The notes beneath the pieces are model-generated. The model worked only from the letters and a program-made list of their open reading frames with translations. It was not told the origin of the DNA and searched no databases. Positions 2,921 to 42,781 of a DNA stretch of 64,000 nt are shown piece after piece. Numbering within the stretch: position 1 is the stretch's first letter; each line of letters opens with the position of its first letter. A program made the position numbers and the translations under genes. The stretch is from Ylistrum balloti (Eukaryota): the NCBI RefSeq assembly GCF_031769215.1, contig NW_026782147.1:124001-188000 (forward strand), written 5' to 3'.

Positions 2921-2965
2921 TGCATAATACAGTTGTTTCGTCCTTTAAGACTCGGCAGTGATGTC
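2921..2965 (-). ncRNA. Minimal type I hammerhead ribozyme motif, degenerate (HHR-a)
   Basis: Minus strand GACATCA CTGCCGA GTCT TAAA GGAC GAAA CAACTG TA TTATGCA. Core A6 is changed and stem I is damaged. Family flanks span about 2860-3070. Confidence 0.7.
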
Positions 2966-3661
2966 AAAAGCCTTCAGTGTTGAAACCTAGGAGACGACCG
3001 AGGGAAATCCAAACTGGTCAAAAGAAATTCCGAAACATAGATGAAGAAGTGTACTAAACCAAAAGTATAATAAAATAAATTTCAAAATTTTCTTTGTAAA
3101 AAGTTTTTAAAAGAATGTCATGTACATGTGTATATTCTGAACCGGGCTCCTTTTTCGAATTAATTGAAATATGGCATGCAGGTCACAATTAATATCGTTA
3201 GCTTAAGCTCATCAGGGGTTTCTACCACAAAGAATCTAAACAACTATACAAAATATTTTCAAGTGAATAGCACGTCCCAGTGCAAAAAGGTTTTGATTTG
3301 GTAAAAATTAGCCAAATAATGGATTAAACTCTGTCTCAATATTTGAACTGTGTCTTAATTGGATATGATTTAATTCAATTTGTTCATTGAAGTATTTTTA
3401 TATCCATCGTTATGAAAGTTCTTCTACAATATTTGTGGAATTCTTAAACTTATCTTTTACTTTTGAGGTAGGTCGCCCGTAAGCAATGTTAATGCAAATA
3501 ATAAATAATCTTGCTGCGGAATTGTAAAATGATACTCTGACGATGAAATTCGAAGTTAATTAGAGTGTTGTCACATGGTCAATGATTATGAGAACAGAAA
3601 AAGTCACATAAACGATCAACAAGAATTCTTTTTTTCTAAAGTATCAAAGGATTAAGATTAC

Positions 3662-3772
3662 ACAAACAAAACCAGAAAACCGAAAAACAAAACAGAACAA
3701 ACCCGCTCCCCCCCCAAAAAAAACCCACAAAAAACAAAAACAAAACAAAACAAAAACAAAAAACAAAAAACA
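3662..3772. repeat. A-rich (CAAAA/CAAAAA)n low-complexity tract
   Basis: Read directly from the sequence. Confidence 0.7.
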
Positions 3773-3854
3773 ATTTTAAAAATTGTTGAAAGTAGTTTTA
3801 TTATGCAGATAAAGAGTCGGATTCAGCAGAGTCAAACAATGAATGAACTGAACT

Positions 3855-3891
3855 GCATCTGTTTCCTCCTTCTTGGACTTTTCAGTGATGC
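3855..3891 (-). ncRNA. Hammerhead motif, degenerate (HHR-b)
   Basis: Minus strand GCATCA CTGAAAA GTCC AAGAA GGAG GAAA CAG-ATGC. The cleavage triplet is deleted. The 3' flank ttcattgtttgactctgctgaatcc matches the flank of HHR-c. Confidence 0.6.
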
Positions 3892-4030
3892 TATTGACCT
3901 ATTGACTTTCGTATTGGACGAAATATATATAAGAAAAACCAGACAAGGAGATACAGTCAACCCAATTACTCAATAAATTTCATAAATGTCATAATATCAG
4001 TGGTTAATAATTCCAGAACGCCGTCAATTA

Positions 4031-4333
4031 TTATTGCATTCTGAATCGTGCTTCTATTTGAATTAATTGAAAAGTGGCATTCAGGTTACGGCAAATATCG
4101 GGGTTCCAAATCAACATGCGGTTTCTGAAATCTTTTGTGTCTTTCGTGCAATCCTCAATATTGCAGTTGTACTTACAGCTCCTGAGATATGCCGTAATAT
4201 ACATGCCATGCTTAAAAACGAGACCAAAGTATAAACAAAGGAAAGAATCAGAGACCCTTGGAGAGAACCGGGTTATAAAAGCAGGTGATTCAAAATGATA
4301 AGTGACATCTGTTTCATCGGCAATACCTGTCAT
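4031..4333 (-). other. Unidentified 100-aa ORF, open for about 16 more codons upstream; possibly a captured or decayed coding fragment
   Basis: ORF track. Mixed, protein-like composition (MTGIADETDVTYHFESPAF...RSCKYNCNIEDC...). No family recognised. Confidence 0.3.
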
Positions 4334-4508: not shown

Positions 4509-4703
4509 ATGACTGATGCGTCCTGAGGGTACTCGCCACAATCCCCGTGACGATGGATCATGCGTACTGGTGATACTTGCCAAAGTTCCGGAAGGGATGG
4601 CTTATGTTTCCTGGGGATACTTGCAACGGATCCGGTAATAATGGTTCATGCGTGTTGGGGATACCCGCAACAGATCCGGTAAGGATGGCTTATTTTCCTG
4701 GGA
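4509..4703. repeat. Diverged 44-bp tandem array, about 4.4 copies
   Basis: Units start at 4509, 4553, 4597, 4641 and 4685 (atgactgatg, atggatcatg, atggcttatg, atggttcatg, atggcttatt) with exact 44-bp spacing. Confidence 0.8.
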
Positions 4704-5006
4704 AACTATATATATCAATATTTTCTTTTTCTTTGAACGACAAAGTCAGATATATATTCAAGGAAAAAAATAGTTTACGGTCTGAAATGATGAAGCAAGC
4801 CCAATTTGAAAATGCGTAAACAAATAGATAAATGAATTAAAAGGCTGCAATGTGGGAACGTTTAACATATTATCAACGTGCCAAAATCTGTTAAACTTGA
4901 TATTTGTTTCTGCAATTTCTAAAGAGATTACAAAAGACACCTGTGAAAAACACCTTTTGATACAATTCTGGATTCAGATACAGTAGAGCCAAACAATGTA
5001 TTAAAC

Positions 5007-5038
5007 TGCATCATACAGCTATTTCATCCTTCTAGGAT
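5007..5038 (-). ncRNA. 3' half of a hammerhead motif (HHR-c)
   Basis: Minus strand ATCC TAGAA GGAT GAAA TAGCTG TA TGATGCA. The CUGANGA half is missing. Confidence 0.6.
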
Positions 5039-5589
5039 CTAAAATCATTATTTACAATAATTTCAAAATCTGGTAATTTAATTTTATACATGCTATCCAA
5101 GTGTATGCTGTATGCTATGAATTTTTATGAACAAAACATAAACGGAAAATCATGGGAGGAAAAAGAGAAGAAAAAAAACGATGGAATATATATTTCATAC
5201 AACCTTGCCAAAATAAGTTATTAAGGAATTTGTATTATAAGCTTATGAGTTTAAATGAAATTAGTCTCCTTAGATATCTGTATAATTTTGTTAGGCCGAA
5301 AGTGGTTTTTCCACCGCCTCAGATGATATGTGTCTGTTTTATCAGATCCTAAAATCTCTTTCTGCTCAAAGAAAAATCCCATAATCCAGGAAGTTGTTGT
5401 GAAGGATCGAACAGAATTTGTTATAAGACTAGCTGGTTGTTATGACAACAGGATCTATCTAGGCACTGGATATAGTCGGTAGTCCACTTTTTTCATTAGA
5501 ATTTTTTCTTGAAGCGAATAGTCTATAACTTTGTATCATCTTATAATTTTTTTCCAACTTTCATATCAGTGAAAACCAAAATTAAAAAA

Positions 5590-5830: not shown

Positions 5831-6668
5831 TAAAAATTCAATAACCAACTTTTTTGGGAGAGTAGATCATAGCTCTCTAGTAGTTTCAATACTTGAGCAA
5901 CTAGAATAAGATAATATGATGTACTGTAATTCATAAAAGCAAAGTTTATTGATGCACGTTAAATATCGTTCAATACACATCGAGATTTTCGGTTCTTAGA
6001 AACGGATATGCATTACATGCAACGGCATGAAGAACGGATCAAAAAGTAGTACCGCTAGCAGCAAAGGAAACATTGCCTGTCAAAGGCACATCGATTAGAT
6101 TTCCTTGGAACGGGAACCTTATAGTTTGTTTGACGGGTCTTATGTTCAAATGGTGTGTGGCTGTTGGCCATAATCAAGACCATGTCAAAAGTTACTTGAG
6201 AGCGTTACTTGTATTAGAATTTCATGCGGGGTGATGTTTACATTCATTTGCCAGAGGTAAATCAGCTTGTAATTCATTTCCAGCGTCTGTCTTTTGTATC
6301 ATTATAAGATAATGACACCTTCCGATGGAAATTTATGATAGGCGAGGTATTTGATGAATATTTTTAAAAAAGTGTTATTCATTTGTGTGCCCTTTTGTAC
6401 AATCGATTGAATAAAACTAGATCAAAGAGGTTTTTTCATTCTTCTATGACTCGTTATTGATACTAAAGGGCATAAGCATGGAAAGTCAAAAGGGACTTTG
6501 AAAGATCAACGTGAAAGTCACGCTACCTATCAATAAATCAAATTGGTAACTTTTGCGCGCTGAAATTTCTTAAAATTTGACAATATGGCATTTAAGACAA
6601 TGAATTTTGCAGGAATGATATATAAGAGAGTAAAGTGGAATAAAGTAATGGAGGAAAATTCTGCCAAC

Positions 6669-11960: not shown

Positions 11961-14900
11961 AAATGGATCTTATTGTAAAATAAAGTTTAAGAGAAAAGTT
12001 GTGTTTGAGGTTTTTCTTTGAAAGACACTCATGTGTGTAAATATTAATACTTTGATTTTCGAGTTACATTTTGTGAATTCACCATATTTGTTCTGTAGAA
12101 AGTTGAAATAAGTGATAATAAGCGATGTACATTTAGGTTATTGCCCTAAAAGCTATAAATAATTCTAATATTCATCAATTAAGTCTTTCTTCTTTAACTT
12201 TGCATTTTTTCTTGAACCAAATCTTTGGAAATCTATGTAGTGTTGGTGAATAAATGATTGATATCCAACTTTTAAACACTGAACGTTAGACATCTATTTG
12301 AAATGTCTTACAAACTGATATAAGATATTGATATTATTCTGGTTATAGGTATTCACATAACGTCCTTCGAAATGTTTTATGAAAAACTAACAACACACCA
12401 CGTACATTTAACTAAATACATATTAAGAAATGTTGATAAAGTTCAGCATTCTATTGAAAGACTCTAACTGTACATAAAAGGCCTTCAGAAACTGGGAACA
12501 CTTTTTTCATATTTTTTTTTTTTTTTTTTTGACAAAATAATTTTTAAAATGACTTAACCAGCTAATATATTTGTCGATTTGCTGTCTTTCCGTATCCGTG
12601 ATTAAATATTGATTTTTGCTTGATGTTGACTTAACATAGACCGCTCTGTTGTTTTCCTTGTAACTTACATATTTTGTATAATCAAGTTATGAAATTATAT
12701 GTTAATTTTCATTCAATCCGAAACACCTGGTTTTCTTGTACTCTTTCAAGAATTTTAAATCTTTCTTTTGTTTTTATTTTGTCAAAGTTTTATTGAAGAT
12801 GAGTAAAGATTATCATTTTGTTTTAAATGGTTGAATTTTGTATTTTGAATGTTTTACAACAGTTTTTAAATCATTCATATCCGTAACTTATAATCACACA
12901 ATTTTGTGATATCACTTTTAAAGTTTATATTTTGTCTATTTTGTCCGCTTGAAATTTTAATACCGATTCTGTTGATAGATCGCATGAATTTTTCTGATAT
13001 CATTATTTATGTAAGTGCACTTTATCAACTACATCAACTGACGGCAGTAATATTAAACAAACTCTCTCAATGTCTGTCTTGTCATCATATTAACACGTTC
13101 AGACGTACCACAGTAGACTTAGGAAGGCACGTGTATACTAACATTAATAATAAGTAAGTATTACAAACTCTACAGCATTAAGAAGACATTGATAAAGTAA
13201 TAACTTGATATGAATACTATTCTTCTGGTAACGTTTTGTTAGTAGTAATTCTTACAATGTAAGATTTCTAACTCTTCATTCTGTTCCACGTGTGCCTTAA
13301 TTGCATCTTCATAGGTGGTAACTAGTGAAAACGTATAGGAAATTATATACGAGATAAAAGACGAACAGTAAGTACATGAACAAAATACGAATTATGAAAT
13401 GTTTATCAAACAATGCCATTCATTTATCACATCATAATGTCATCACAAGCATTGCTTTGACAATTTGGGTGTTGGCAACAAAACGCAAGCATTAAATTGT
13501 AAGTAGAAAAGTTAATGACATCCACATACTTAGTAAACGTACACGATAAAAGAGTTACCTGTGATGCATAATCATTGATGTTTGGAAATTGCATTAAGGA
13601 AATCAGACAAAGGGCGACGTTTGTGAGGTTTACAAACAACATGATGTATCTTGAGTCCTGTAGTAAATTAAGTTGTTACCTTCATTGTGATCATTCAAAT
13701 ATTTCCAGAATGCATGTTTCCGAGCAAAATGCATTGTTATACCAATTTAACAATTGTTATTGATTAACAGTAAAACTGGTAACATACGACTCAGCTATTG
13801 GTTTGTCTCAGTAAACCATAAAATTATATGTAAATATGAATAATATACTTTTAAATATATCTTGTTTTTATATTGCGCGAATATTTTGTCTTTCATCTCG
13901 TCGTTCTTAGTATCAGTATAATATAAGCCGTTTTGTTTTTGTTACCAATTAAATGTTCAATGAGTTAATCTATTCTAATATTATTTAAGTAGGAATGATT
14001 CTACTCATTTTAAAACATTTTATTTACTTTACTAAGAAATTTGGCGCAAATTTATTTAAGTTATATTATTTAAGAAGGCTTAAAGTCTTATTTCAAGCCT
14101 TTCATGAATTTTATTGTAAACACTTCAGCAGGTAAATTTGCCGATAAACTCAGAATCCAAACTGGTAAAATTGATCTAAGGAGCACCGATTTAAATACTT
14201 GCTCTCGCTCTATCTTTCAGTGTTTTATTGATGATCTGAATAAGTGTTTTAAATAAAAATTTACACGAAGATTTTCCAAGTTTGAATTCAATGTATCTAT
14301 GACTTGTAATACAATGGTATTAAAATGGTGTTAGAGTACATTTCTAAAACAGATAATATTTATCTAATAGATGAAATAGCAAGGATGGAATATAACAAAA
14401 AGTAAAAAAATGTATTTACTCGGTTATATATCAAGTTTTGTTTAATCAAAATAATTTTACAATATGTATAAAAAAGAGAATATGTATTAACAGCAGAAAG
14501 GTGAAAATAAATCAATTAATGTTGAAACCCAATACAATATAGAAGAAAATTATGTCATAAGCTAAATAAGCTTATCAATTCGATATTCGAACTGTAATGT
14601 AATTTTTATAGTTTAATTTGCATTTTCTATTCAATTTCTATGATAAAAATATTATCATTTGATCAAAAATGAATCTTTCATTTATGTTTCAAAATTCCAA
14701 AGTGATGGTAAGAAATATCAAAACCAGATGGGTGGTACACTTACCCAATAATTCAATAAATTTCGTAATTTTCAAATATCTGGTTGTTTTAGAACAACAT
14801 TAAGTATATATGTATATCCTGAACCGTGCCACTATTCGAATGATTAAAATAATGCGATTTTGATACAAAACCATTCGAGACATGTATCACTTATTAATAC

Positions 14901-17940: not shown

Positions 17941-20236
17941 TTTGTTTTATTTTCGTGTAAACAGAACTCCTGACCGGATCATTAGTAACATATAGTAACA
18001 ACATAGGTTTCAATCTTGAATAAACGAAAAGTTTTTATTCAGTAAAGAGAGTGGTTTTAGGGTACAAGATTTATCAAACTGGCTATAACTCTAGGAACTA
18101 TACATTTTAAAAAGTATTTTAGCACAATGCTGGTTTGAATTTCTCGTCATTTATTTATTTACATGTATTTGTTCTTTATTTGTTTATCAAATTAGCTGGA
18201 AAGGAAGGCCAGAATTGGCTGAAGAAATCCATACAAAAAAGTACATTTGTATTATCAGTTCTTGACTTGAGAACTGCTTTGATTTAGCTGGATATATTGC
18301 CGAAGTTACTTAATTATTGTAATAACGTTGTATTGTTATGTTGCTGTATATCTGAAATAATTGGATTATTTGATTCTTGTTTCTCAACAAGTTAGCAATA
18401 TTTTTGGATAAACTGTCTTCTCACATTAAGTTATTTCAGCCTTGCTATCAGTAATATGTCTTTGTTCTTTCCGTAAAGTACAGTGTATTTTTTGTTTTTG
18501 TTTTTCTTTTTTTAAATAGACAAGATTGTTGGTCTGGCTTCAAAGTATCTATTCACGATTACTTTCAATAAGAAAATCTAATGGTAGGTAAGGATGAAAG
18601 TTTTCTATGCTGAATATCTGCAATCCCATACACTTAATGGCCAAGGAAAGTGCTTTGTTTCTATAGATATTTTTTTTTTCAAAACAAAATAATGTTAAAA
18701 GAATTTTAATAATTCTACAGGGCTTATCTCTGTACACGCAAATTATTATTTATAAGTGTATAATTTAAAAAAAATCAATGCGACACAACCAGTAGAAAAG
18801 GAATTTACAAATAAATAACCTGTTAAATGAATGTTATATTATATCATGAACTAAATTTTTTAGACATAAATGTGTGATAATACTATTGTGACGTCATAAA
18901 TACGCAACGTCTTGATGACGTCACATGATTGTCTCAGTTTTGAAAAACGTACCGTCCGCATAGGAAACAACTCGGTCTTATAGTGAATATTTATTTGCTA
19001 GTTTTCACTTGTTTTTTTTCAGAAATGCGGATTGTATTGTGAAAAGAATCTTACACTCGTGCCGATGTGATATATACTTACTTAAATTAATTAACATTTG
19101 ATATGTCACTCTTCCAAAGACACTTTGTCTTTTCGCCATAAAATCAAATCAACCAATGAATTTGGATAATTAACAAATGATAATAAAATTTCAGCCAAAT
19201 AATCAATTCTATTCCATTATCATTCTGAAAAAGATGTACAAACATATTTGGCCCCTTCATCTTGATTCAATAACGCCCCCTCTTCGACGTATTAAAAAGG
19301 GACCTTTAATTGCCCGGTATGAAGCAAAGCGTAGCCAAATAGGCCTCAGTGATTTGTTTCGAATATATTTAGCACAATGAAGTTTGATCGTGTTGAAGTA
19401 TACAGAAACAACATAGTGTTAAAAACGATTTATTGGAGGGTAGTTTTGTTATAGCTTTTTTATACTGTATAGTTTGTTAATTTCGTGGTCGTCTATTTTG
19501 GCTATTTCAAGGGTTATTAAATTTCCCGTATGTCTATACATTGTGATAAATGCAGACAAGCATGTAACATATTTTCCTTTATTTCAGTTGATGTATTTAA
19601 TTTTGCGGTATCTTTGATAGCCGTAACAATAGCGAAATTAGATTCCCCGCGAATATTACCAACTAAACATTATTGTCAACTAAAACTCTTAATTGTTGAT
19701 GTTTGTTTAACACAATCCAAATCAGCTTTTTTTTCAAAACAGTGGAAAAAATACTCCTTGAGTGTGTGTTAATATACTGAACACGTACAAAAATGTGTAA
19801 ATACCACACAACTGAATGGCATTTTCAATACCAAATTTAGACACAAGTTGGCCAAATAATTAATTGAACTGCACAATACAGTTGTTTAATTCATGCAGGT
19901 TTTTCCAAAACGATCCATATCCACCCACTGCGTTATCTGTTCGGTTCACGCCATATCTACCATATCCTGGCTCACGCCATATCTGTCATACCCACCCACT
20001 GCGTTATATACACATCCGGTTCATGGCAGATCTGTCCTGACAAATATGGGTTTCAGGATGGTTAGACAAAATTACATACTTATATTATTTAGTGACAAAA
20101 GAGAAAACTATAAAAGGAACTCGAATTTATCCTTTATCTACAGAATAATGAATTAGTGTACCTCTCCGTCTAAATTTTGTCATGTTTTTCGATCACTTTG
20201 GGCCTACCTCTGTAAACTCCAAGGCTTTTTCGTCTA

Positions 20237-20281
20237 TCATCACAAATGAGTCCTGGAAAAACGAAACAGCTGTATGATTCA
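20237..20281 (+). ncRNA. Hammerhead motif, degenerate (HHR-d)
   Basis: TCATCA CAAATGA GTCC TGGAA AAAC GAAA CAGCTG TA TGATTC. Core and stem II are mutated. Family flanks span about 20150-20360. Confidence 0.6.
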
Positions 20282-22882
20282 GTTTAATTCATTGTTTGTC
20301 TCTACTGTATTTCATTAAATTCCTATTGGATGATGTTATTCGCGTCTTTTGCACAATCTATTATTATGACAAAAACGGTTGCATATTTTGGTCAGAAAAC
20401 GAGTATTTTTGTTATTCATTTCATAGTATATTTTTCTCTTCTTTTTTTTTCAAGCGGAGCATTTTACTGATTTTCATAACACTGTTTCTGCTAATGTTAT
20501 TTTTGCTACTGGTGGAAACATTTTCCGGTTTCATAATACTACCATTTTGGTACTTTTTCCCTAATTTAATGCTATATTTTTCAGTTTGTTTCATAATTCT
20601 GATAATGTTGGTACGTCTGTCCACTTCATATATATATAAAAATGATTTTTGACAAAAGAAGAAAGAAAAATCATTTTTATTTATAATTTACTCGCATCTC
20701 GTCAAATCAAGTTTTTTTTCTCTCTCTCTCTCTCTATATATATATATACAATTGGAGTTAGTATGTTCTATTTTTTTACTATTGTTGTTCCGATTCGTTT
20801 TTATTTAAAAAATCTGATTCTGATATTGGTGGCGAGCATTTTGTTTCCTTTTCAATCTTATTTCTATATTTTATTTTTATTTTTTCATTTCAACATTTTT
20901 TTTTTATTTTTGCCTTTTATTTTCTATATTTATTTTCCCCCTTTCTATAACATTTATATTAACAGTACGAGTGGTTGTTTTTATGATTCTACGATTCCTG
21001 TTACGATATTCCGTTTATCTACGGTTGGTTATATAACATGAGTTGCGATTCTATCTTGCCACGATTTTCTAGTTTTTGATGGTTCTGTTGTGGAGGCCTA
21101 TGATTTTGTTTCGAAGGTCATGTTGTTATTTTTGGTTTTTGATAATTTTGTTTTGGAGATCACGATTTTCGATTTTTTTTATCCTATTCTTGGTGCTAAA
21201 ATGATTTGTATAATTCCAATAATGCTGGCACGATTTTCCTTTCTTCGAAAATTATTTGTTATCAGTAAAAATGTAATTTATTAGTGAGGGATGCGTTCAT
21301 CTTTTTCTTATATCCCAATGTGTGTTCTCGGCTTTGATAAAGTAATTAGCGTTCTTTACGATGACATCGATATCAGACATTTTAGAAGAGGTAATGAGCA
21401 CTTTAGAGTGAGCTAATGGGGATTACAATTACCCGTGGTGCTATAAATTATTCTATTTTAGCTACTTTCTTATGTTTGCTTCTCATCCACGTACTTGAAG
21501 GCCAGTTGTAGGTAAATCGTTCTACTTTAGTGCCTTGTAGGTAAAGTGGGTTGATAGGATCGGTCACCAGCAGGGCTACTCCCTCCCTTAATACAAGGAT
21601 TCACTGAAATACATATCCTGCCGTTTCTATGTCATTATCAAAAAGAAAAGTGCATCCTGTGCTGGTTCTTATATGTCTCTCTTTTCTCCTCTATAAACAT
21701 ACACTTCATCTTGTGATCATCATCAACTGCCACCACGAGTAAAAAATATAGAGCTCTGCGCGACTGCGTATTCTTTTGAATTGCTATCACATTAGCAATA
21801 TGGTGTTATCCGCCCCTTTAATGCAGTTTATCAGATAAAGCTGAAGCTACATATATCTATTCTAATAATGTAGGTAAGATGATATTTATTTGATCATACT
21901 TATTTATATGGATCAAGGGAAGTCCAGGTCGGAAAGTATCAGATTTTGCGATGAGGACAAAACCGCTTATAGATAGAGGAGTGATGTTAGACAAGAAATC
22001 AGAATACAACTGTAGGTGAATTTTCGACTTTAAATTCTCATCATGAATACATTAAAAATGAATCAGTTATTGAAAAAAAATATCGTAATTAGAAAAAAAA
22101 ATAATATGAGAGCATACGTGTAAAACAGATTATGCAATGTCGTGAATTTATAGATATTAAGAATTATATAACATTAAAATGTCAAAAAGTACAAATTGAC
22201 AAACACTGCTGCAAATGGGCTTATCTATGTTGATATTATCATAGATTTATATCAAAGTATATTGATTTGGTTTGTGTTTAAAACATTTTATGTCTGAGTA
22301 TCAGAAACAGCTGTTTCTGTTTCAACGATAATTGGGTCATTTAAGGGATTGTTTTTATGTAAGACCACATCGAACTCTATCTGAGACTTCACATCACTTC
22401 CGGATCAAATGGACTGAATAAATTAGTCTGGGATGTCTATGGAGAAAATACCCATAATAATGGTAGAAAACTTATAAATGAAATATCATGGCTTCTAACT
22501 GTATGTGGACTAAAAATGGTTACCTCCCTTTTTAACCATAATACCCTATTAACCTTGTAATATAAAAAGTGTACGTTATCTACTCTTGGTACTTAACTTC
22601 TTCGACCAGTAAATTGCTGCAGTTTTGGGTTTTACATCTTTTTTATGTTTGCTTTCATTTTTGTTTCTTTTTTTTTTCCTTTTTTTTTTTTGTTGTTGTT
22701 TTGTGTATGTGTGTTTTCAGATTGTATATATATAATTTTATTGAAAATATCAGATATATATGAATAATGAAACTTATCAAATTATGGGGCGAGTGCATCT
22801 CTCTATCTCAATTTTGACGTTTCTTCCTATCAAATTTTGGTTTCCATCAGTCGTCTCATAGGTTTCAAATTTTAGGCCCTTA

Positions 22883-22926: not shown

Positions 22927-24160
22927 AGCTGAATTCATTATATTCCTCTGTGGTATCTTATACAAATTTATATTGAGAGGTGTTATTCACTTGTGTGTCT
23001 TTTGTGCAAACTATATACATCATATACGTCATCATTTTAGTATTCCTACTTAGAGTAAATTATATTGTTTCAAAGCTTGGTAAACAACTTTTTGTCGCAG
23101 ATATGTCTCTTTCTTACATATTGTTTTCGTGGTCAAAGCTATAATATAGAACACACCATTCACATAAATAAACATATATATCTGTGCATGCATTTCTTCA
23201 ATAAAAATTCTGATCTTTCCATTAGTTAATGTATTTACTGTGTAATTAAGATCTTATAATTAACTGATTAAACTAAATAGATTGTTACATAACTTTCTAT
23301 AATATAATCACGTCAGAAAGATGACTTTGTCTGATATCAATTTAGAAAATCGGTCTACATGTAGTACTGATAAATGAATGTGATACCCAAAACATCCAAA
23401 ACAAAACAATTCGTAAACAAAATTTAAAGTAAGACAAAAAACAATCAGAATAATCGATCAAGTTTACGTATTTGTACTTTACAAATTACATGTAACTCTT
23501 TCTTAACATCAATATTTTAGGGTACAGAGTACTAAGACACAATATTCCTAAATATTCTGACGATCGTCCGTGAACAATTAATAAAATTGGTTTTGTTTAA
23601 AATGATTTTCATTTGTTGTTGTTGTTGTTGTTGTTGTTAACTGTTTCTATTCCGAATGGTAATTTTATTGACGCTTTGTTTACCATGTCAAGGTACCAAG
23701 TCAAGATTTAAGACATTTTCATCCATTAAAACAGCATCTAAATTAGTAGTGACCAGATGGTACCGTTCTCAAATGTCATTTTCATATCTTAATATTTAAT
23801 AACAAAACGCTTTGATATTTAAATATAACAATAATATATTTTGATGTTTACAACAAATTACTGTATCTGGTCTACTGGTATTACAAACTTAGTTCCATTC
23901 TTCAAACTAAAAAATTACAACATTTAAAACACCATGCTTATGGCATTGCTTACTCTTAAATTACGTTTAAGCTTAATTTGAAAAAAAAATACATATCAAC
24001 AAAATTTTTATTTACACTTTACATTGATGAAATCATCCTTATGTAAAAAATGAGTAAGAGATCACGTGTTCTGGAAGGGAAAGCGTCCTAGCGTTTTCAC
24101 AAGATTGTACAAAAGACACACATTTAGAGTTAGAAATAGTAGATCATGATAAATTACACT

Positions 24161-24204
24161 GCATCATATAGTTGTTTCGTCCTTCTAGAACTCGTCAGTG
24201 ATGC
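24161..24204 (-). ncRNA. Hammerhead motif (HHR-f) with intact core
   Basis: Minus strand GCATCA CTGACGA GTTC TAGAA GGAC GAAA CAACTA TA TGATGC. The stem III palindrome is damaged. Confidence 0.8.
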
Positions 24205-25514
24205 TTAGGGCCTAAATGTTAAACCTAGACGGCAACCAAGAAAATTCCAAAGGAAATGTCTAAATCAAGATATAAAATCGTGTGCCTACATCGACGACAC
24301 TCCGTCATATAAGCATTGGTTCAATCGACTTCAAGCAACATTAGAGTTAATATTCATTATGCGATTTGTAGTCATGTAATCTTCTGTGTGTAAAAAGTTT
24401 TGACATATTTACCGCGCATGCGAACATTTTTTTCCCGGCTCCATTGCTGTTGTTATATTATAATTACATCTGCATCTTAAAAGCGAGGAAACGTTAGAGA
24501 GGAGCACTTCTAACCAGTTGCAGAGTGTCTGTGCCGGTAGTGTAATTCGGTTTAATGTCATATAGATGTTTTTTTCCTGTGATTGCACAAAAGGTGAATC
24601 AGAAGCGTCAAAATGACATGGTTCCTTTTGTATTCAAAGCCAAATGAATATGATTTTGGTGTATTTAAGGAGCTTGTATCGATGATGTTAATTCTCTTTG
24701 GTGATGAAGTCTGCCTTTATTCATGTAATGCCAGATGGAGACACTATTTCGTCATAATCAAATTAGTCTGATAATAAATTGTTAATTTGATTATAACTTC
24801 TAACGAGTCTAAGAAGATTCTCTAGATGTCTTAATCAAAATAATTTTCGTGATATTATCAAAACATTTTTTCTAATATAACTATGACCGGGAGGAGCAAA
24901 CTTTAATTTCTACGGTCATGTCGAAAGTCGGTTTAATTCAATCAGTTTAATATATAGATCTGACAAACACATCTGTCGTATTCAATGACTTCACATGGAA
25001 TCCTACTGGGTATCACCGCTGTGAGCAAATGTATCTCATCAACGCAAAAACAAGAATCATCTTTAATTAGCATAAGCGGCGGAATGCCAATAAATCTCAG
25101 AGATACAGATATAATGAATGGTGTTGAAAAGAACACTGTTCAGCGTGATCTATCAACACATTTTGTGTAGAAATTCTTTACGTTGATGCCCGTTTTTTAT
25201 CAGAAGTAATAACCGACCATAATGTAATGTCAAAGTATATACGGGGAATTTGTAGGTACTACATAATATTGAACCCTCTAAATCAGTATAGATACCCGTA
25301 GTATCAGAGAGACACACATAATTTAAATAGAGGAGATATATTTATGAATCATTGATTTCTTTAACTAGATATTTGCTCGCTTAAAGTAATATTGCACACA
25401 TATTTGCTTCAAATTTACCATATTTGTAGTTTTCAACATCTACCAAATATGAATTGAGTTAGATAAGGAGTGTTATATTAAATTTTTGTATAAACTATGT
25501 ACATCAAAGATATC

Positions 25515-35971: not shown

Positions 35972-36724
35972 AAACCCATATTTTTATACGAAAATCAATA
36001 CACCTGATTCCGTGTTTCGATACCTGTTTCTTTAATTGTTAGATAATGCTTTGTTATGCAATGAAACAAGTACACATGCACTTAATGGTTAGGATTCAAT
36101 ATTGACGTTACTTAAATTACGACAATATGAATAGGTTTGACTATTTTATTTATTTCATGGTATTTACCTGAAGTATCACTGTCTTGTAATATAAATCCAA
36201 TATGGTTATACTGATTACAGATACATCTTACACCCTAACTAAAGCATTGACGTAATACGGCTGCAACTTCAAATCCATATGGAAATGAAGTCTGTTTAAC
36301 TATTTACCTAAACGCTTTAAATTCTGAGTAAATTAAGCGTCGTATAGACACAGTAAAAACGGCCGCTCATAAATTCACCCAAACAGTACATATTCTGAGA
36401 AGTGATCAGCTAAAATCAGTCTGCTTTGAGATTTTATCTATTATCGTCTACACCATTGCCATGAAGAATCACCAAAGGTAGATTCGAGAACAGACAAGAG
36501 ACAGGGTACCAGGGTACCGGACATAACCAGCACGCTGTGCTATAATTCATTTCAACAGCAGGCACGGATCATGAAAAATACATGAACTTATTTTTTTTTG
36601 CTAAATAATCACAGATATGAAATTTATTATTTAAATTATGGGGCTAGTGTACCTCCCCATCTAGATATGGGCATGTTTTGGATCACTAGTAAATTTTCCA
36701 CAGTCGCTTACAACGTTTAAAAAG

Positions 36725-36768
36725 GCATCACTGACGAGCCCTAGATGGACGAAACAGCTGTATGGTGC
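36725..36768 (+). ncRNA. Most intact minimal type I hammerhead ribozyme (HHR-h)
   Basis: GCATCA CTGACGA GCCC TAGAT GGAC GAAA CAGCTG TA^TGGTGC. Core complete, palindromic stem III ACAGCTGT, GUA cleavage triplet at 36760-36762, one mismatch in stem II. Confidence 0.85.
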
Positions 36769-36838
36769 AGTTTGGTTCTAGTGTATATAACTTTAAAATT
36801 ATATTAAACGGTGCTTTTTAATTGCGTGTCTTTCAACT

Positions 36839-37032
36839 TACGGTATACCTGGAAATGTTCGCCCTTTATTGCCCATGAACAGCGAGGACGAATTTAAGAT
36901 GGGACAAAACATGCTATACTTACATAACTCGTACATATAATCCACAGAGAGCCAAATGAACGCGAAGGCAATTCATGAATAATGGTACAATCGCGAAAAT
37001 AACCTGTAGCGAAAATATCCTGGCATACAGTA
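36839..37032. mobile_element. MITE, same family as 11748-11960
   Basis: TACGGTATACCTGGAAATGTTC ... GAAAATATCCTGGCATACAGTA termini, with similar internal gcgaa motifs. Confidence 0.7.
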
Positions 37033-37779
37033 TACCAAAACCATATCACTGGTACCAGATCACTATGGCATATTGTCTATAACAAGCATAAACAGTAGTA
37101 CTTACAAAGATAATTACGTAAATCATTTTGTGGTCGGCCACAGTGTTCCGTACTGTTTCATTCCTATCACACCAAGATAGACGGGGTATACGAGAAAGTG
37201 TCTCGCTTTAATGACATAACCCACTTATGTATAGAAACAAACACTTGTATTTCTGAAACAGAACCCATTGTGAATGGGAAAATATTTGACGTCTAGGCCA
37301 GGTAAAAATGTTGGTTAATGGACCGAAATATTAAGGTTACACCTTTTGTCGTGCTTTTATAAATGACACAAAACCGAATATAAAAAAGTATTGGACACAA
37401 CACTACCAGCTAGTGAGTTAAACTTCTCCGCATAGCCGTTTTATCTTCTTATGTCTTATCAGTAGTGTAAGAGGCCAAGGCTACAAAAATCGAGCGAGTG
37501 TATCTTAACACGGTTTTTAAACAGACATAGATCGGGAGATCACTAACTCCTCTAATTAAAGATTCTGATAATTTTTATCATTGTACAGTGTGTATTTCAT
37601 AGGAAAACGATTGTTATTTTACGTGTTCTATGTTCTATGTAAATATGCTACAGTTACATATACATTATATGAGTAAAAATGAATTCATGCTTCCATTTTC
37701 ATCCTTTACAGACTAATGCAATAATTATTGTTATTTAGACAGTTGAAAATTAAAGGGAAGCTTTAAGGTTGCCATGGGA

Positions 37780-38070
37780 TTTCGTTCAGAAATTTTGTAT
37801 GATATCACGCTGGACGTGCTTGATGCTAGTTACTTATTTCGTAGATTCTGTTGTTGTATACCTTGTTCTCATTTGAGATCATGACATTACTTACTTAGAT
37901 TGACCAATGTTTACACGGTGGGTATTGCCGTTGAAGCAGAAGACGCTTACTCTTCCTGAACACCTGTTCTAAGTCTACTTGTACTTTTTCAGGAGTCTCC
38001 GTGTAAAGCTTTCGTTCTTTTGTTCATATTTTGACGTAGTTCTATTGCGTTTGCATACGAGTATGTTGAC
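37780..38070 (+). mobile_element. PLE 3' UTR remnant
   Basis: gaagacgcttactcttcctgaacacctg and its flanks match the reverse complement of 41790-42030. Confidence 0.7.
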
Positions 38071-38953
38071 GTGTTGGTATTTTGATGATATTTTTTTTGT
38101 GAAAATGCTTTGATAGAATGTGATGTGATTTATATATGTTCATGGATGGACACGGAAAATTGGACTTTTTATCACCGTTGCATGTCTGTAATAACTGGCT
38201 TCAGGTTGAAGTTTTTGAAACGTGTTTCATTTTCCTCAAAGTAATGTATATCAGATGTGTCCTAACCTCGGTTAAATGCATAATCAAACAAAGAAAAAAA
38301 TCAATTTAACGGGAAAATCAAATTATAAATTACGAGTTAATAAGTCCCTGTGTTTTGATATACACAGATAAATTTGACTTGTTACCGATAATTTTAGAAT
38401 ATAAAAGAGATTATCATTAATGGCAATCACATAATGCTTTAAGGTCACATTAACTAAATTATCCATTTCCATTTGGAAATACCAAGCAAACGTAATCACA
38501 CAATCACTGGCTGTGGATCGCTATTTTACTTATCAGTGACACCAATTACATGTCTCATTATCTCAACGAGTCTTTTGTACAAATTTAATTGAAGAAGTTT
38601 TTTATCATAGTGAGGGTTGCATCATCTAGAATAAGTTTTTTTAAGACTGTGCTGTTATCGTATAAACAAAATCCGGATGCCTGTTTCCCTATAACTGACA
38701 CAGATAACTTATATTGCAAAATTCGAAGAAAGAAATCGAGCAGTGGTACAAGACAGTCCTCGTCAAGTATGCAGACACTGAAATCAGTATTGCTATGTCA
38801 GGTTTTAAAATTTTGGTAATTGTTTGAGAGAATCTTACCTGAACTTCTATCACAAACATACAAACAATTAAAATATAAAAATGAATAAATATATAAATTT
38901 CAGCGACTTTTTTCTTATCTGTTGATTTATTTGAAACAACGGTTGTGTCTTCT

Positions 38954-39420
38954 TCAAGGACACTTGGATACCTTCCCGCAAACCTAGTAAGTAACTCGTA
39001 ACACTCTCCACTAAAAATGCTTGACGACCAATCTAATTTTCATCCATTCTGTCAGTTCTGAGCATGAACATTCAAAGGTTTTTTTCTAACCTTATGAATC
39101 TGAGGGCCGAAAGTCGGTCAATACCTCTAGGGATTCCTTGGAGTTTTGTCAGATCTGATTTAAGGTCTTGAAGATGCAACGCAAAAACGCTAAAATACGA
39201 TAACCACTAATATCTTACGTATACAGGAACTCGCCTGTGCAATAAGGCAATGTTCTACTTGTTTCGTCTTTAGTGTTATGCATTTTCAATCAGAACGGAA
39301 CGTGGATTCATTTGGAGACATACGAATATTTCCTTCTGTGGGTGTTTCTTTGAGACAGTGATTGTTGTAGGAATACAAACTGCGTTTACCGGTGGTGGTA
39401 TAATAAGGATTTACATAATG
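38954..39420 (-). pseudogene. Decayed 3' half of a type A LRR gene
   Basis: tcaaggacacttggatacc equals the paralogs' VP/PKCP* end. gttctgagcatgaacattc (CSCSEL) and ctgagggccgaaagtcggtcaatacctctagggattcc (PRxIxRLxAL) are recognisable. Frameshifts and stops present. Confidence 0.8.
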
Positions 39421-40158
39421 TACAATTGGAAACTTCCATTGACGTGTTGTATATCCAAAAAGTTAAAGACGCACTCGGCAATGTTAATCATGTTTCATGG
39501 CGTTACTTTACATGTGGTGAGATGATTAAAAGCAAATTTTACAGAAAAATATTGCAAATTTCTTTTCTTTTCAAATCGAGACATCATCATGAAGTAGTAT
39601 TATCTAAACTCAGCAAAATGATTGCCCTCTATTTGTAGGGGTTTGCATTTCTAAGGAAGCCAAACGATGGCCACCTCTGTGTTGATGTGGTTGTGTCAAG
39701 TGATACGTGAGGTAGCCACCAACTACAGCAACCTTGCCTCAAACTGAGCTAACCAGAGCTATTCACGGGGCGACAAATTAAACAAAATATTTTATTTAAT
39801 AAACAAGACATCAACAGATAATATCTAAAGTATTCTTATCAAAAAAAAAAAAAAAAAAAAACATATATTGCACAAAAATATAAAGAAGATAATCATTACC
39901 AGGTAATAGTTTGTTTATTAAATATCTGATTCAGTAAAAGTTTCGTCTTCTAAGCATTTAAATGTCAAGTTCCTTAATTTACAGTTTTCATTCCTAAAAA
40001 TCAACTACTTCAACTGTCAAATCTCAAGCATCGTGTTTCACAAATTGAGAATATTTCATAAACTTCAATTCCGTATCAAATGAACAAAATATCAATTTGT
40101 ATTTCATTGTTTTTGTTTTGCAAGTATTTGACATATTCCAAACAACGTTAATGTCTTT

Positions 40159-42781
40159 TTAAGGGCACTTGGGTACCTCTTCGCGAATATAATCTGACAA
40201 ATACTTGTGTATATTGTGACACTCTCCATCGAAACCCAAGTACTGCTGCCGAGCAATCCAATTCTTCATCCATCCAAGTTCGGAACATGAACATTCGATA
40301 TTAATGTTATTTAACTCTACATTCCTCAGAGCCGGAAGTCGTTCAAGAGCTCTTGGAATTCCAGGGAGTTTTGTGGAATCGAAATTTAGGCTTTGAAGAC
40401 TGTATGCTTCGTTGAATGCGTCAATAGATATATTGGTCAAAGGGGTTTGATAAAAGCTAAGGAAGCGTAACTTCTGGAGTCCAGCGAAGTCCCCGGGTCC
40501 AATAGTTGATAACTTGGTATTGTCCAAAGTCAATGTAGTTAAACTCCTGATACGACGTATGGCAGCCGGAACGTGATCTATATCCGTGTTACTGAAATCT
40601 ATTGACTGCAGCAGTGGCTGTTCTGGTAATGTAGTTACATCCCATGTCGACAGTGGCGAGTTAGTCAACGTCAAGTGGGTAAGGAATGGAACAGCGGAAA
40701 CATTCGGAACACTCTTTATACTACTGTTGCTTAAGAAAATGTCTCCAAGTGATTCCATACCCATGAAAGCGTCATCTGGTATATTTTCAGATGATAATAC
40801 AATATTATCGAAGAAAGCCAAATCGGTCATTTTCTTCAGTCTCTTTAGTGCTTTTGGAATACCTTTGAGTACTGTTGATTGAAACGTCACACCCTGGATA
40901 ATGTCCTCTAAACCTTTAAATGCATCTAAGGGCAAATCAGACATCGGTAATTTATACAGTGTCAAACTCCAAACTGATTTCAGCGTTCCAATTGATTCCG
41001 GCCATGTCGTCATTTCCGGTGATCCTATATCAAGAAATTCAAGAGTGGGTGCAAATGCCATCATCATCGGAAGGGTCTTGATAGGGTTGTCATGGATACT
41101 TAACATGGTAAGGTTTGGCATTCGTGCGATTTCATTTGGAAGTTCTGTAAACTTATTGAACTGCATAAAAACAGAATCAAGATATTTTTCCGATCCATTC
41201 AATGCCCCATCGTCTATTACCTCAAAGCCATTACGATCAATCTGAAGAGTGCAAAAAGGGATATTATCGAAAGCTCCAGCCGGGATCCTTTTGATGTTGT
41301 AGTTATAATTCATGTTAAGTTTCCAACAGTTCCAGGTAGCGTTGACCTTTGTAAAGGTAGGAAATTCAGTTTGAGTGAGATTGTTGCATGTTATAGCATT
41401 GTAATCACAGCTGCAAGGAGCCTTTACAGGACACGGCCGGGGATCATGTGGATAAGCAGAACCATGTGTGGCTGTAGTTACCAGCAGCTGTTGAGGAATA
41501 CAAGCACCCAATACATTCTCTAGGACAGGATTTGTATTGTGGACATATAAAACAAAAGGGCGTTAATATGATGAACGAATTTTGTTAAGGATTGTATAAG
41601 AAAAGACAATACAAACACAAATTAGAATGCGAGAGAGAGAGGTTCCCTTTTATCAATGAAACTGTTGTAATATACAGCTGTTTGTCTTTTTAGAACTCAT
41701 CACTGATATGAAGTATCTACAATATTGAAAAAAAAATCAAGAAAATACCAACATGGCAATATCATCATAATTTAAACTCAAATTCCATAAAACTAGAGCA
41801 AATATGAACAAAACGAAGATTTACCCGGAGACCCTTAAAAAAGTGCAAGGAGAATATGACCAGGTGTTCCGGAAGAGTAAGCGTCTTCTACTTTATCGAC
41901 GACACCCGCCATGTAAACCTTGGTCAATCAAATCAAGTAATGTCACGTTCTCAAATGAGAACAAAGTATACAACAAAGGAATCAACAGGCAAACTAACGA
42001 GCATCAAATACGTCCAGCTTCATATCGCACAAAAGAATTAGAACATTTCGCAATGACATCACTATGGCGACCATAAAACTTCATCCTTTTAACATTTGTG
42101 TCACGAGCTTGTCAGTCTGTTGACGACTTCTTGCACGAAAATCGTGATGATGGGAACAGGCTCTTGAATATCGAATCAACTGTGACATGTTAATACCATA
42201 GATTGGAGATGAATTGATTGAAAAAGGTAATAACTGGTGAGAACCAATGTCATTATATAAATCGTCAGTAAACTTACCCTATAGTGCAATCATTGTTAGA
42301 AGGTTCGTTAATAGTCGATGTACAACAATATAGAAATATTTACAGAGGCTGACGTGTGCATAGGAAAACGAATGAAAAATCATAATTTTTCGTGGAGGAT
42401 TTCGAGGGATTTTCCAGGAATACATGTTTTCGTGAATCGATCAGCTGTTAAAATCAGTATCATCTGATGGCGTGGGTGTTATCTATTAATGAAATTAAGA
42501 CACCACGGAATTTGGCCACACGAAAACATATCATTTGACAAACAACGTATTGATTTTGATTTTAAAATGACGATGATGATTAACTGCTTTAAACAACGTA
42601 TTGAAATCAATATCCATCAAACGGTTGTAAACAACTTCTGGGCACTGATATGAAAGGACAAAATGACATTGATATTAAATAATGAAAAGGAAAACACGAT
42701 TTCAATATCAGCAGAATTTTGTAAAGATTTTAAACGATTACTCACCGTGATTAGACCGATATTTATTCCATGTGTTGCCAT
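40159..42781 (-). CDS. Secreted LRR-only protein, type A (LRR3), about 454 aa
   Basis: Exon 1 42781-42746 MATHGINIGLIT with gtgagt donor. Acceptor ctcaacag, exon 2 41487-40159. Same architecture as LRR1. Confidence 0.92.
41667..41708 (-). ncRNA. Hammerhead motif, degenerate (HHR-i), at the 3' end of a PLE remnant
   Basis: Minus strand ATCA GTGATGA GTTC TAAAA AGAC -AAA CAGCTG TA. Confidence 0.55.
41725..42190 (-). mobile_element. PLE C-terminal remnant plus 3' UTR inside LRR3 intron 1
   Basis: Minus strand SQLIRYSRACSHHHDFRARSRQQTDKLVTQ...FYGRH, typical of the PLE RT C-terminal region, then the UTR with gacgcttactcttccggaacacctggtc. Confidence 0.8.

What the first reader, a model, noticed from the sequence alone, without database searches (positions are those of the whole stretch)
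2921..41708. Dispersed repeat family carrying a minimal type I hammerhead ribozyme (at least 9 copies in 64 kb)
Seen: consensus GCATCA-CTGACGA-GTCC-TAGAA-GGAC-GAAA-CAGCTG-TA^TGATGC at 2921, 3855, 5007 (half), 20237, 22883, 24161, 33453, 36725 and 41667. It is embedded in a shared element of roughly 250-350 bp (5' attatggg..agtgtacctc..gatcactttgg; 3' cattgtttg..gtgtcttttg). Stem I and II pairing is kept in the better copies. Established: minimal type I hammerheads with a palindromic stem III occur in Penelope-like element pLTRs and in retrozymes, and are thought to cleave as dimers. Inference: a high-copy ribozyme-bearing retroelement family, possibly with a circular RNA intermediate; copy 36725 may still cleave.
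Basis: partly seen in the sequence, partly recalled or inferred. Interest (0 to 1): 0.75.

Follow-up and report, generated by a model that had tools for sequence, protein, structure and literature searches.

The report
Decayed hammerhead-ribozyme retroelement family copies

Summary
Profile searches add five or six fragments without a recognisable HHR.

It is 36% GC and non-coding.

Genome-wide, a 25-nt HHR core string occurs 18,580 times, against 0 for the reversed control. A 25-nt string from the 5' part occurs 1,678 times. Most HHR units lie in 44/45-bp arrays inside other copies of the element. This scan has already reported those arrays on other DNA of this genome.

Copies share a fixed 3' end and have evenly spread 5' ends. 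Some continue head-to-tail into a 22-48 nt or longer piece of a preceding unit. This is how Penelope-like elements (PLEs) and their non-autonomous derivatives insert.

The consensus HHR scores above Rfam's threshold elsewhere in the genome (up to 41.6 bits). Its helix III is a loopless 8-nt palindrome, so only a dimer or a tandem pair can adopt the active fold.

Window copies are 64-78% identical to the consensus. Eight of ten lack core bases. Copy 36725 keeps the core but has a C.A mismatch in helix II.

No RNA data exist, no partner element was found, and the stems show no covariation. It is a new member of a known kind, of moderate interest.

The parts
2845..3330 (-). More-than-unit copy. 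A partial upstream unit (about 3243-3330, starting about 2 nt after the HHR cut site) joins head-to-tail to a nearly full unit. The HHR lies at about 2921-2964 and is dead (core A6 changed to C).
   Evidence: nhmmer unit model positions 14-443, E=5.5e-84; CM hit 2917-2968, 64.7 bits; upstream piece aligns to unit positions 344-424; sequence read; core.
3803..4132 (-). Element copy, unit positions 40-391. HHR at 3845-3895 is dead (G8 changed to A, helix I 3' strand lost).
4133..4215 (+). Weak plus-strand fragment: a 22-nt tail piece plus the 5' region. It abuts the previous copy head-to-head with a gap of 1 nt.
   Evidence: nhmmer E=0.46; tail and 5'-region motifs seen. Weak on its own.
4920..5054 (-). 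5'-truncated half copy that starts inside helix II of the HHR (unit positions 314-433). No CUGANGA box.
   Evidence: (31.9 bits)
6401..6475 (-). A weak plus-strand 3'-end fragment lies beside it at 6358-6412.
   Evidence: CM 24.7 bits, E=3.4e-4; nhmmer
14695..14845 (-). Fragment of the 5' part only (unit positions 105-258), without an HHR.
   Evidence: nhmmer E=1.1e-30
19786..19889 (-). 5'-truncated fragment of the 3' part only (unit positions 325-434).
   Evidence: nhmmer E=2.1e-9
20114..20368 (+). Element copy. HHR at 20237-20280 is dead (U4 and G5 changed to A).
   Evidence: nhmmer 183.6 bits; CM 65.5 bits
22717..23022 (+). Best-preserved window copy, 78% identical to the consensus. HHR at 22883-22926 is dead (G5 changed to A; helix III no longer palindromic).
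24093..24331 (-). Element copy. HHR at 24161-24204 has an intact core and paired helices I and II. Helix III reads CAACTA and is not self-complementary.
   Evidence: Rfam RF00163 19.9 bits; CM 73.6 bits
33330..33590 (+). Element copy. The HHR at 33453-33500 has its core boxes, but carries a 3-nt duplication in helix II and a broken helix III.
   Evidence: present in run X1
36522..36846 (+). Element copy, unit positions 83-420, 71% identical to the consensus. HHR at 36725-36768 has an intact core, helix I paired (one G.U), an intact helix III palindrome and a C.A mismatch in helix II. The predicted cut is after 36762.
   Evidence: Rfam RF00163 25.2 bits, E=0.089, below the cut-off of 34; CM 74.6 bits; fold z=-0.02; present in run X1
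37348..37478 (-). Decayed fragment (unit positions 290-434) with no recognisable HHR.
   Evidence: nhmmer E=2.4e-5; no CM hit
41634..41729 (-). Strongly decayed fragment. The HHR remnant at 41662-41713 has C3 changed to G and the GAAA box damaged.
   Evidence: CM 26.4 bits, E=1.1e-4

Best explanation
These are relics of an old, very abundant family of short non-coding, non-autonomous retroelements of the retrozyme or Penelope-dependent type. The unit is about 410 bp and 36% GC.

Unit layout: a 5' region beginning AGATAGCAGGTGG; a roughly 275-nt body; one 44-nt minimal type I hammerhead; then about 95 nt ending in TGTACAATCTT. The hammerhead has a 6-bp helix I, a 4-bp helix II with a 5-nt loop, and a loopless 8-nt palindrome (ACAGCUGU) as helix III.

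Proposed life cycle (inferred). The element is transcribed as a multimer or as read-through RNA. Two hammerheads, from neighbouring units or from two molecules, pair through the palindrome into a double hammerhead and cut after GUA. A reverse transcriptase supplied in trans, most likely from a Penelope-like element, starts cDNA synthesis at a fixed site at the unit's 3' end. The template is multimeric or circularised. Synthesis stops at variable points.

What this produces in the genome (shown):
- copies with a constant 3' end;
- evenly spread 5' truncations;
- copies longer than one unit, carrying a 22-48 nt or longer piece of the preceding unit's tail;
- abutting head-to-head inverted pairs.

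After insertion the copies decay neutrally. In this window they are 64-78% identical to the consensus, and 8 of 10 hammerheads have lost essential core bases. They most likely do nothing now.

Status of each claim. Shown: the family, its anatomy, its copy numbers, the canonical hammerhead consensus and the decay. Inferred: transcription, cleavage in vivo, circular RNA, and the identity of the reverse transcriptase.
For: Family and copy number:
- 10 CM hits in the window and alignment A1.
- Genome-wide, 18,580 matches to the 25-nt HHR core string against 0 for the reversed control.
- 1,678 matches to a 25-nt 5'-part string against 0 for the control.

Hammerhead identity:
- 27 genomic places reach Rfam RF00163's gathering score, the best at 41.6 bits.
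- The consensus carries all core bases.
- The HHR is the best-kept segment across 42 dispersed copies: 0.86 identity to the consensus against 0.74-0.77 for the flanks, with the core at 0.87 and helix III at 0.92.

Dimer requirement:
- The monomer's lowest-energy fold pairs the core CUG with the CAG of helix III, which is inactive.
- The homodimer forms an 8-bp intermolecular helix III with swapped helix I strands, at -33.3 against -27.2 kcal/mol for two monomers.
- A natural two-unit tandem folds the same way (L016).

Retroposition signature:
- 3' ends peak at unit positions 431-435, while 5' starts are flat from 1 to 260.
- 8 of 19 copies that reach the 5' region are preceded in register by a tail of another unit. 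The upstream pieces measure 22, 33, 45, 48, about 80 and 111 nt, or are whole units.
- There are 36 exact head-to-tail junction strings genome-wide against 0 for the control, out of 152 exact 5'-start strings.
- Three abutting head-to-head pairs have gaps of 0, 1 and 21 nt.
- Partial tandems, 30-40-bp tails and adjacent inverted 5'-truncated copies are the published hallmarks of PLE insertions and of their non-autonomous derivatives (PMC8557442, PMC11167929).
- A 2026 preprint argues that animal retrozymes derive from PLE pLTRs (10.64898/2026.07.22.740005).
- PLEs with their own minimal HHRs are present in this genome.

Other:
- Non-coding: the longest ORF in a dimerised consensus is 45 aa.
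- Window copies are 64-78% identical to the consensus, and their core mutations are listed.
Against: - No RNA evidence exists. The only public run that holds the stretch is DNA-like contigs.
- No partner was found. None of 30 GIY-YIG (PLE) loci shares sequence with the element except as apparent chance insertions: 3 same-orientation neighbours against about 1.3 expected.
- No target-site duplications were detectable.
- The stems show no significant covariation: 88.8% of cells paired against 88.3% in shuffles, with 58 of 500 shuffles as high.
- The extra conservation of the HHR may partly reflect how the sample was gathered, since the searches included the HHR.
- 5' ends do not pile up at the cut site: 2 of about 75 lie within 5 nt, against about 1.9 expected.
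- In vitro, HHR cleavage was not needed for PLE insertion (PMC11167929). The ribozyme's role in mobility is therefore open even for PLEs.
Confidence: 0.7

Rival explanations
1. It is a LINE-dependent SINE-like retroposon that happens to carry a hammerhead, as the Sm-alpha elements of Schistosoma do. It would be copied by a non-LTR (LINE) reverse transcriptase rather than by a PLE.
For: Constant 3' end and flat 5' truncation. Short, non-coding and dispersed. No PLE partner was found.
Against: No tRNA-, 5S- or 7SL-like head was found. ARAGORN finds nothing, and Rfam in E-value mode finds nothing of that kind. There is no A-rich or microsatellite 3' tail. In-register head-to-tail junctions and short upstream tail pieces are typical of PLEs, not of LINE-mobilised SINEs.
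Confidence: 0.12
2. It is a DNA-level element of the bivalve type with flanks and an internal tandem array (pearl, DTC84 or Helitron-N-like). It would spread by rolling-circle or cut-and-paste transposition, and the hammerhead would be a passenger.
For: Elsewhere in the genome the element has the modular shape of left flank, 44/45-bp array and right flank. That shape is described for tandem-repeat-containing MITEs of bivalves (PMC3879986). Units are somewhat more alike within an array than between arrays, 0.89 against 0.85, so arrays grow partly at the DNA level.
Against: The termini are not inverted repeats and do not resemble Helitron ends. The flat 5' truncation with a fixed 3' end points to reverse transcription. 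The best-conserved segment is an RNA catalytic motif in one fixed orientation.
Confidence: 0.06
3. The hammerhead resemblance has no functional meaning: a repeat that matches the motif by chance and was never a ribozyme.
For: Window copies fall below Rfam's gathering score. There is no covariation and no RNA data.
Against: The consensus has every conserved core base, three helices in the right places and a permitted cut-site base. It scores up to 41.6 bits against a cut-off of 34 in 27 places. It has the same architecture as the minimal HHRs of this genome's own PLEs and of published PLE and retrozyme HHRs (PMC4209133, PMC7229834).
Confidence: 0.03

Closest known systems
Non-LTR retrozymes of metazoans, e.g. 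the 350-390-bp repeats of the mussel Mytilus galloprovincialis (Cervera & de la Pena 2020, PMC7229834)
   Same: A short, AT-rich, non-coding unit of a few hundred bp. One type I hammerhead per unit, lacking the loop 1-loop 2 contacts. Thousands of copies. Head-to-tail junctions. A bivalve host, according to earlier notes of this scan, which I did not verify.
   Different: Most copies here are dispersed monomers or 5'-truncated pieces, not long whole-unit tandems. The hammerhead alone is multiplied into 44/45-bp arrays inside the element. Helix III is a loopless palindrome. Circular RNA is shown for the mussel elements and is untested here.
Minimal hammerheads in pLTRs of Penelope-like elements, and non-autonomous PLE derivatives (PMC4209133; PMC8557442; PMC11167929; bioRxiv 10.64898/2026.07.22.740005)
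   Same: A hammerhead with a palindromic, loopless helix III that should act as a dimer. Partial tandems, a short tail extension, adjacent inverted 5'-truncated copies, and a fixed reverse-transcription start. PLEs with such HHRs coexist in this genome.
   Different: No RT or GIY-YIG ORF in or next to the element. No sequence similarity to the 3' regions of the 30 PLE loci sampled. Helix I is longer (6 bp) and helix II shorter (4 bp) than in the PLE HHRs of this genome.
Newt satellite 2 and Schistosoma Sm-alpha hammerhead repeats (from my own knowledge; cited within PMC4209133 and PMC7229834)
   Same: Type I hammerheads embedded in abundant short repeats. An unstable helix III that requires a dimer.
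   Different: Different hosts and sequences. Those are long satellites (newt) or SINE-like units with other termini (Sm-alpha).
Tandem-repeat-containing MITE-like elements of bivalves (DTC84, pearl family; PMC3879986)
   Same: A modular layout of flank, internal short tandem array and flank in a high-copy bivalve element.
   Different: Those elements carry no ribozyme and are treated as DNA elements. Here the repeated module is a complete hammerhead, and the insertion anatomy points to reverse transcription.

Membership tests
Hammerhead ribozyme type I (Rfam RF00163) | Conserved catalytic core (CUGANGA ... GAAA, A15.1-U16.1, cut-site base not G) | tested here: met
   The family consensus and many genomic copies have it. 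In the window only 36725 and 24161 keep it, and 8 of 10 are mutated.
Hammerhead ribozyme type I (Rfam RF00163) | Score at or above the curated gathering threshold (34 bits) | tested here: not met
   Window: 25.2 and 19.9 bits. Elsewhere in the same genome the same family reaches it in 27 places, up to 41.6 bits. The family qualifies; the window copies are decayed.
Hammerhead ribozyme type I (Rfam RF00163) | Three helices around the core, supported by covariation | tested here: inconclusive
   The helices are present: 88.8% of cells are paired, against 12-50% when the partner is slid by 1-3 columns. Covariation is not above the shuffles, 58 of 500 being as high. This is a single family decaying neutrally, so the test has little power.
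Hammerhead ribozyme type I (Rfam RF00163) | Self-cleavage | not testable with these tools
   Only thermodynamic predictions are available: an inactive monomer fold and a dimer that forms the double hammerhead.
Non-LTR retrozyme | Short (about 170-400 bp), non-coding, low-GC unit with one type I HHR | tested here: met
   About 410 bp, 36% GC, longest ORF 45 aa, one HHR in the basic unit.
Non-LTR retrozyme | Head-to-tail tandem repeats of the whole unit | tested here: inconclusive
   Junctions exist: 8 of 19 copies in my sample, and 36 exact strings genome-wide. Whole-unit dimers are few (L013, L045), and most copies are dispersed or truncated.
Non-LTR retrozyme | Expressed as linear and circular RNA of unit length | not testable with these tools
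   No RNA run holds the stretch. The only run is DNA-like contigs.
Penelope-like element (autonomous) | ORF with RT and GIY-YIG endonuclease | tested here: not met
   No such ORF lies in or beside the element in 60 loci or in the window. The element is non-coding.
Non-autonomous PLE derivative | pLTR-type partial tandems, a 30-40-bp tail, adjacent inverted 5'-truncated copy | tested here: met
   Upstream tail pieces of 22-48 nt in 5 copies and longer pieces in others. Head-to-tail junctions. Three abutting head-to-head pairs, which are too few for statistics.
Non-autonomous PLE derivative | 3' end similar to that of an autonomous PLE in the same genome | tested here: not met
   No similarity in 30 GIY-YIG loci beyond chance insertions. 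Sampling was limited to 1.5-kb flanks and to the best-scoring loci, so PLEs with an N-terminal endonuclease were not covered at their 3' ends.
SINE | Pol III head (tRNA, 5S or 7SL-derived) and an A-rich or simple-repeat tail | tested here: not met
   ARAGORN finds nothing. Rfam E-value search finds nothing of that kind. The 3' end is TGTACAATCTT with no tail.
MITE / Helitron-N with internal array | Terminal inverted repeats or Helitron termini with fixed ends on both sides | tested here: not met
   The termini are unrelated to each other, and the 5' ends are spread evenly.

The most novel reading that the evidence does not exclude
The family is, or recently was, a live retrozyme-like parasite of a Penelope-type reverse transcriptase in a bivalve. 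Its template would be a circular or multimeric RNA copied from one fixed internal start, which would explain the tails and the more-than-unit copies. Multiplying the 45-nt hammerhead inside the element would supply in cis the second ribozyme that its loopless helix III needs. That would tie PLE tail biology directly to retrozymes in an invertebrate, and would give the smallest natural self-cleaving repeat unit.
Probability: 0.2. Interest if true: 0.65.

Novelty: new member of a known kind. Interest (0 to 1): 0.4.

Why it matters
Hammerheads in animal repeats have been known since 1987. They have been tied to retrozymes since 2020 and to Penelope-like elements since 2014, so the class is not new.

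What this family adds is a well-resolved anatomy in a mollusc-like genome:
- a fixed cDNA start;
- flat 5' truncation;
- in-register head-to-tail junctions;
- short upstream tails.

These are the insertion marks of PLEs, here on a 410-bp non-coding element. That supports, outside vertebrates, the recent proposal that animal retrozymes are non-autonomous PLE derivatives.

With thousands of copies, the family is also a practical system for asking why a dimer-only ribozyme is kept by a mobile element.

For annotation of this window, the copies are inert relics lying between leucine-rich-repeat genes.

Tried and rejected
1. Rfam at gathering thresholds gave no hit in the window. Only sub-threshold hits appear in E-value mode.
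2. Covariation across 67 distinct copies gave no signal. I do not take this as refutation, because the copies are neutral descendants of one sequence.
3. Target-site duplications: the longest shared string between flanks averaged 5.45 nt, against 5.22 nt in the control. The copies are too old and their 5' ends too imprecise.
4. I asked whether the two members of a head-to-tail pair are sister copies. Their pair identity of 0.64-0.74 equals the background of 0.69 +/- 0.07. Under a star-like family history this test has no power.
5. Partner search: 30 GIY-YIG loci showed no shared 3' end.
6. I tested whether the about 1-kb spacing of the minus-strand copies at 2.9-6.5 kb reflects a larger repeat unit, as another first-stage note on this window suggested. 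It does not: only the element itself repeats.
7. The whole-unit RNA fold gave z=-1.41, which is not remarkable.
8. A pile-up of 5' ends at the ribozyme cut site: 2 cases (window copy 1, and L084) against about 1.9 expected.
9. Expression could not be tested. No RNA run is listed. Run X1 is DNA-like contigs and only shows that the copies and the 45-nt arrays exist in that sample (901 letters, within the operators' limit).
'Scallop' and 'bivalve' come from earlier scan notes.
A first fuzzy-regex script timed out.

Full report
OBSERVATION

The core pattern with up to 3 mismatches hits 5 times, against 0.00 expected from shuffles. I built a covariance model (R1) from seven window copies with the hammerhead structure imposed. 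Run with filters off, it finds 10 copies at E<0.001.

- Plus strand: 20233, 22879, 33450, 36721.
- Minus strand: 2917, 3845, 5003, 6414, 24156, 41662.

The tenth copy, 6414-6467, is new. Alignment of 300-nt stretches shows a shared element around the ribozyme (A1). A profile of the whole unit adds fragments without a recognisable ribozyme at 14695-14845, 19786-19889 and 37348-37478. Three weak fragments also appear.

Rfam's curated model finds nothing in the window at its gathering score. In E-value mode it reports RF00163 at 36725-36768 (25.2 bits, E=0.089) and at 24161-24204 (19.9 bits), against a cut-off of 34.

Read base by base, eight of the ten copies have lost essential core bases or half of the motif.

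- 2921: A6 changed to C.
- 3855: G8 changed to A.
- 5007: truncated in helix II.
- 6414: C3 and G5 mutated.
- 20237: U4 and G5 mutated.
- 22883: G5 changed to A.
- 33453: a 3-nt duplication and a broken helix III.
- 41667: C3 changed to G.
- 24161: keeps the core, but its helix III is no longer self-complementary.
- 36725: keeps the core, helix I and the helix III palindrome, but has a C.A mismatch in the 4-bp helix II. It folds no better than shuffled sequence (z=-0.02).

THE FAMILY IN THE WHOLE GENOME

The window is contig C290:124001-188000 of a 648-Mb assembly. It is animal DNA of about 33% GC, and the window carries a cluster of leucine-rich-repeat genes. Earlier notes of this scan call the genome a scallop or bivalve. 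I could not verify that.

RF00163 reaches its gathering score in 27 of the scored places, the best at 41.6 bits. At family level this is therefore a bona fide type I hammerhead.

- A 25-nt string spanning the core and helix II, with up to 2 mismatches, occurs 18,580 times against 0 for the reversed control.
- A 25-nt string from the element's 5' part, with up to 3 mismatches, occurs 1,678 times against 0.

The tenfold excess of ribozyme units arises because in many copies the 44/45-nt hammerhead is itself repeated head-to-tail between the two flanks. This scan has already reported those arrays several times on other DNA of this genome. None lies in this window. In my sample, units are somewhat more alike within an array (0.89) than between arrays (0.85). 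The arrays therefore grow at least partly as DNA.

ANATOMY OF THE ELEMENT

Extending the alignment upstream shows a unit of about 410 bp. It begins near AGATAGCAGGTGG and ends at TGTACAATCTT. The ribozyme occupies unit positions 300-343, and the cut falls at 337/338. The unit is 36% GC and has no ORF above 45 aa, even when dimerised.

Over about 75 copies, 3' ends peak sharply at positions 431-435, while 5' starts are spread evenly. That is the mark of cDNA made from a fixed start with variable completion.

The unit is also circularly continuous.

- In 8 of 19 copies that reach the 5' region, the 3' tail of another unit precedes it in register, with only 0-4 nt between.
- The upstream piece measures 22, 33, 45 or 48 nt in four or five copies, about 80 and 111 nt in two, and is a whole unit in two or three.
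- Genome-wide, the exact junction string occurs 36 times against 0 for the control. This is out of 152 exact 5'-start strings against 6 for the control. Given sequence decay, most intact 5' starts are probably preceded by a tail.
- Three copies abut an inverted copy head-to-head, with gaps of 0, 1 and 21 nt. One of these lies in the window at 4132/4133.

Window copy 1 (2845-3330, minus strand) is such a more-than-unit copy. Its upstream piece starts about 2 nt after the ribozyme cut site.

No target-site duplications could be seen. No tRNA-like or other pol III head is present. There is no A-rich tail and there are no terminal inverted repeats.

HOW IT MOST LIKELY WORKS

Helix III is a loopless 8-nt palindrome, so a lone ribozyme cannot form it. 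The predicted lowest-energy fold of the consensus monomer instead pairs the core CUG with the CAG of the palindrome.

Two copies are predicted to form the classical double hammerhead: an 8-bp intermolecular helix III with swapped helix I strands. Its energy is -33.3 kcal/mol, against -27.2 for two monomers. A natural two-unit tandem folds in the same way. This matches what is published for newt, PLE and retrozyme hammerheads (PMC4209133, PMC7229834).

The insertion anatomy has four published hallmarks of Penelope-like elements and their non-autonomous derivatives. These are a fixed start, truncation, partial tandems with a 30-40-bp tail, and adjacent inverted truncated copies (PMC8557442). The hallmarks have been traced to internal initiation of reverse transcription at two nearby sites (PMC11167929). 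A 2026 preprint argues from vertebrate genomes that animal retrozymes derive from PLE pLTRs, and reports retrozyme units as short as 51 bp (10.64898/2026.07.22.740005).

This genome has many PLEs, and they carry their own minimal hammerheads with 6-nt palindromic helix III downstream of the GIY-YIG domain.

My reading is therefore a non-autonomous element of retrozyme type. It would be copied by a PLE-type reverse transcriptase from a multimeric or circular RNA, with the hammerhead processing multimers. The anatomy is shown. Transcription, cleavage, circles and the partner are inferred.

WHAT SPEAKS AGAINST IT, OR IS MISSING

- None of the 30 PLE loci sampled shares its 3' region with the element.
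- The stems show no covariation above shuffles. I attribute this to neutral decay of copies of a single sequence.
- The better conservation of the ribozyme (0.86, against 0.74-0.77 for the flanks) may be inflated, because the loci were found with queries that included it.
- No RNA run exists. The one public run that holds the stretch is DNA-like contigs. It confirms the two copies at 33.3 and 36.5 kb, and shows array-type joints from elsewhere.
- HHR cleavage was dispensable for PLE insertion in vitro (PMC11167929).

RIVALS

- A LINE-dependent SINE (0.12). It lacks a pol III head and a tail.
- A DNA element of the bivalve flank-array-flank type (0.06; PMC3879986). It lacks fixed termini and does not explain the truncation pattern.
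- A chance motif (0.03). This is contradicted by the Rfam scores and by the complete core.

VERDICT

The family is a new member of a known kind, and the window's copies are relics 64-78% identical to the consensus. Interest is moderate.

The more novel possibility is a live PLE-dependent retrozyme that multiplies its own ribozyme to obtain a partner in cis. It remains open at about 0.2.

Noticed in passing
window 31554-62046: A cluster of at least 8 intronless ORFs of about 450 aa, on both strands, each with an LRRNT domain plus LRR_8 repeats. It looks like a tandemly expanded family of secreted or membrane leucine-rich-repeat proteins. The element copies lie between these ORFs.
   Followed up: partly
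window about 37846-38013: Another very high-copy repeat. Summed contig word depth in run X1 is 14,000-20,000, against about 9 for unique DNA. It is unrelated to the hammerhead element.
   Followed up: no
G000 C212:31449-31803; C246:416193-417753; C52:1307228-1307534; C389:270863-271204: A 47-bp minisatellite made of the element's own head-to-tail junction (the end of the tail plus the start of the unit). It is a second internally amplified module of the family, beside the 45-nt hammerhead arrays.
   Followed up: no
L049, minus strand, about 1129-1427: Deletion derivatives of the element that lack the ribozyme. The first 10 nt of the hammerhead are joined directly to the last 32 nt of the unit. 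They are arranged head-to-tail with a period of about 252 bp.
   Followed up: no
L068, L070, L071, L076, L077, L079, L083, L088, L069, L074: Penelope-like elements of this genome carry their own minimal hammerheads, about 800-1700 nt downstream of the GIY-YIG match. Helix I is 3-5 bp and helix III is a 6-nt palindrome (ACCGGT, ACATGT or ACTAGT). A tandem PLE array with a period of about 5.36 kb lies at C422:240415-261997.
   Followed up: partly
L064, L078, L080-L082, L085-L087, about 130 nt downstream of the GIY-YIG match: A recurrent string with a CUGAAGA box, a GAAA box, a 6-nt palindrome (AGCGCU) and a 4-bp helix I, but almost no helix II. It may be an ultra-minimal hammerhead variant of one PLE family, or a chance resemblance.
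   Followed up: no
window 17581-17893, 25506-25869, 4567-4702: Unrelated minisatellites with periods of 34, 82 (or 41) and 44 bp.
   Followed up: no
L084:685-768 (minus strand): A 5'-truncated copy of the element that starts 2-3 nt after the ribozyme cut site. It lies about 730 nt downstream of a GIY-YIG domain, in the same orientation. As a single case, it may be chance.
   Followed up: partly
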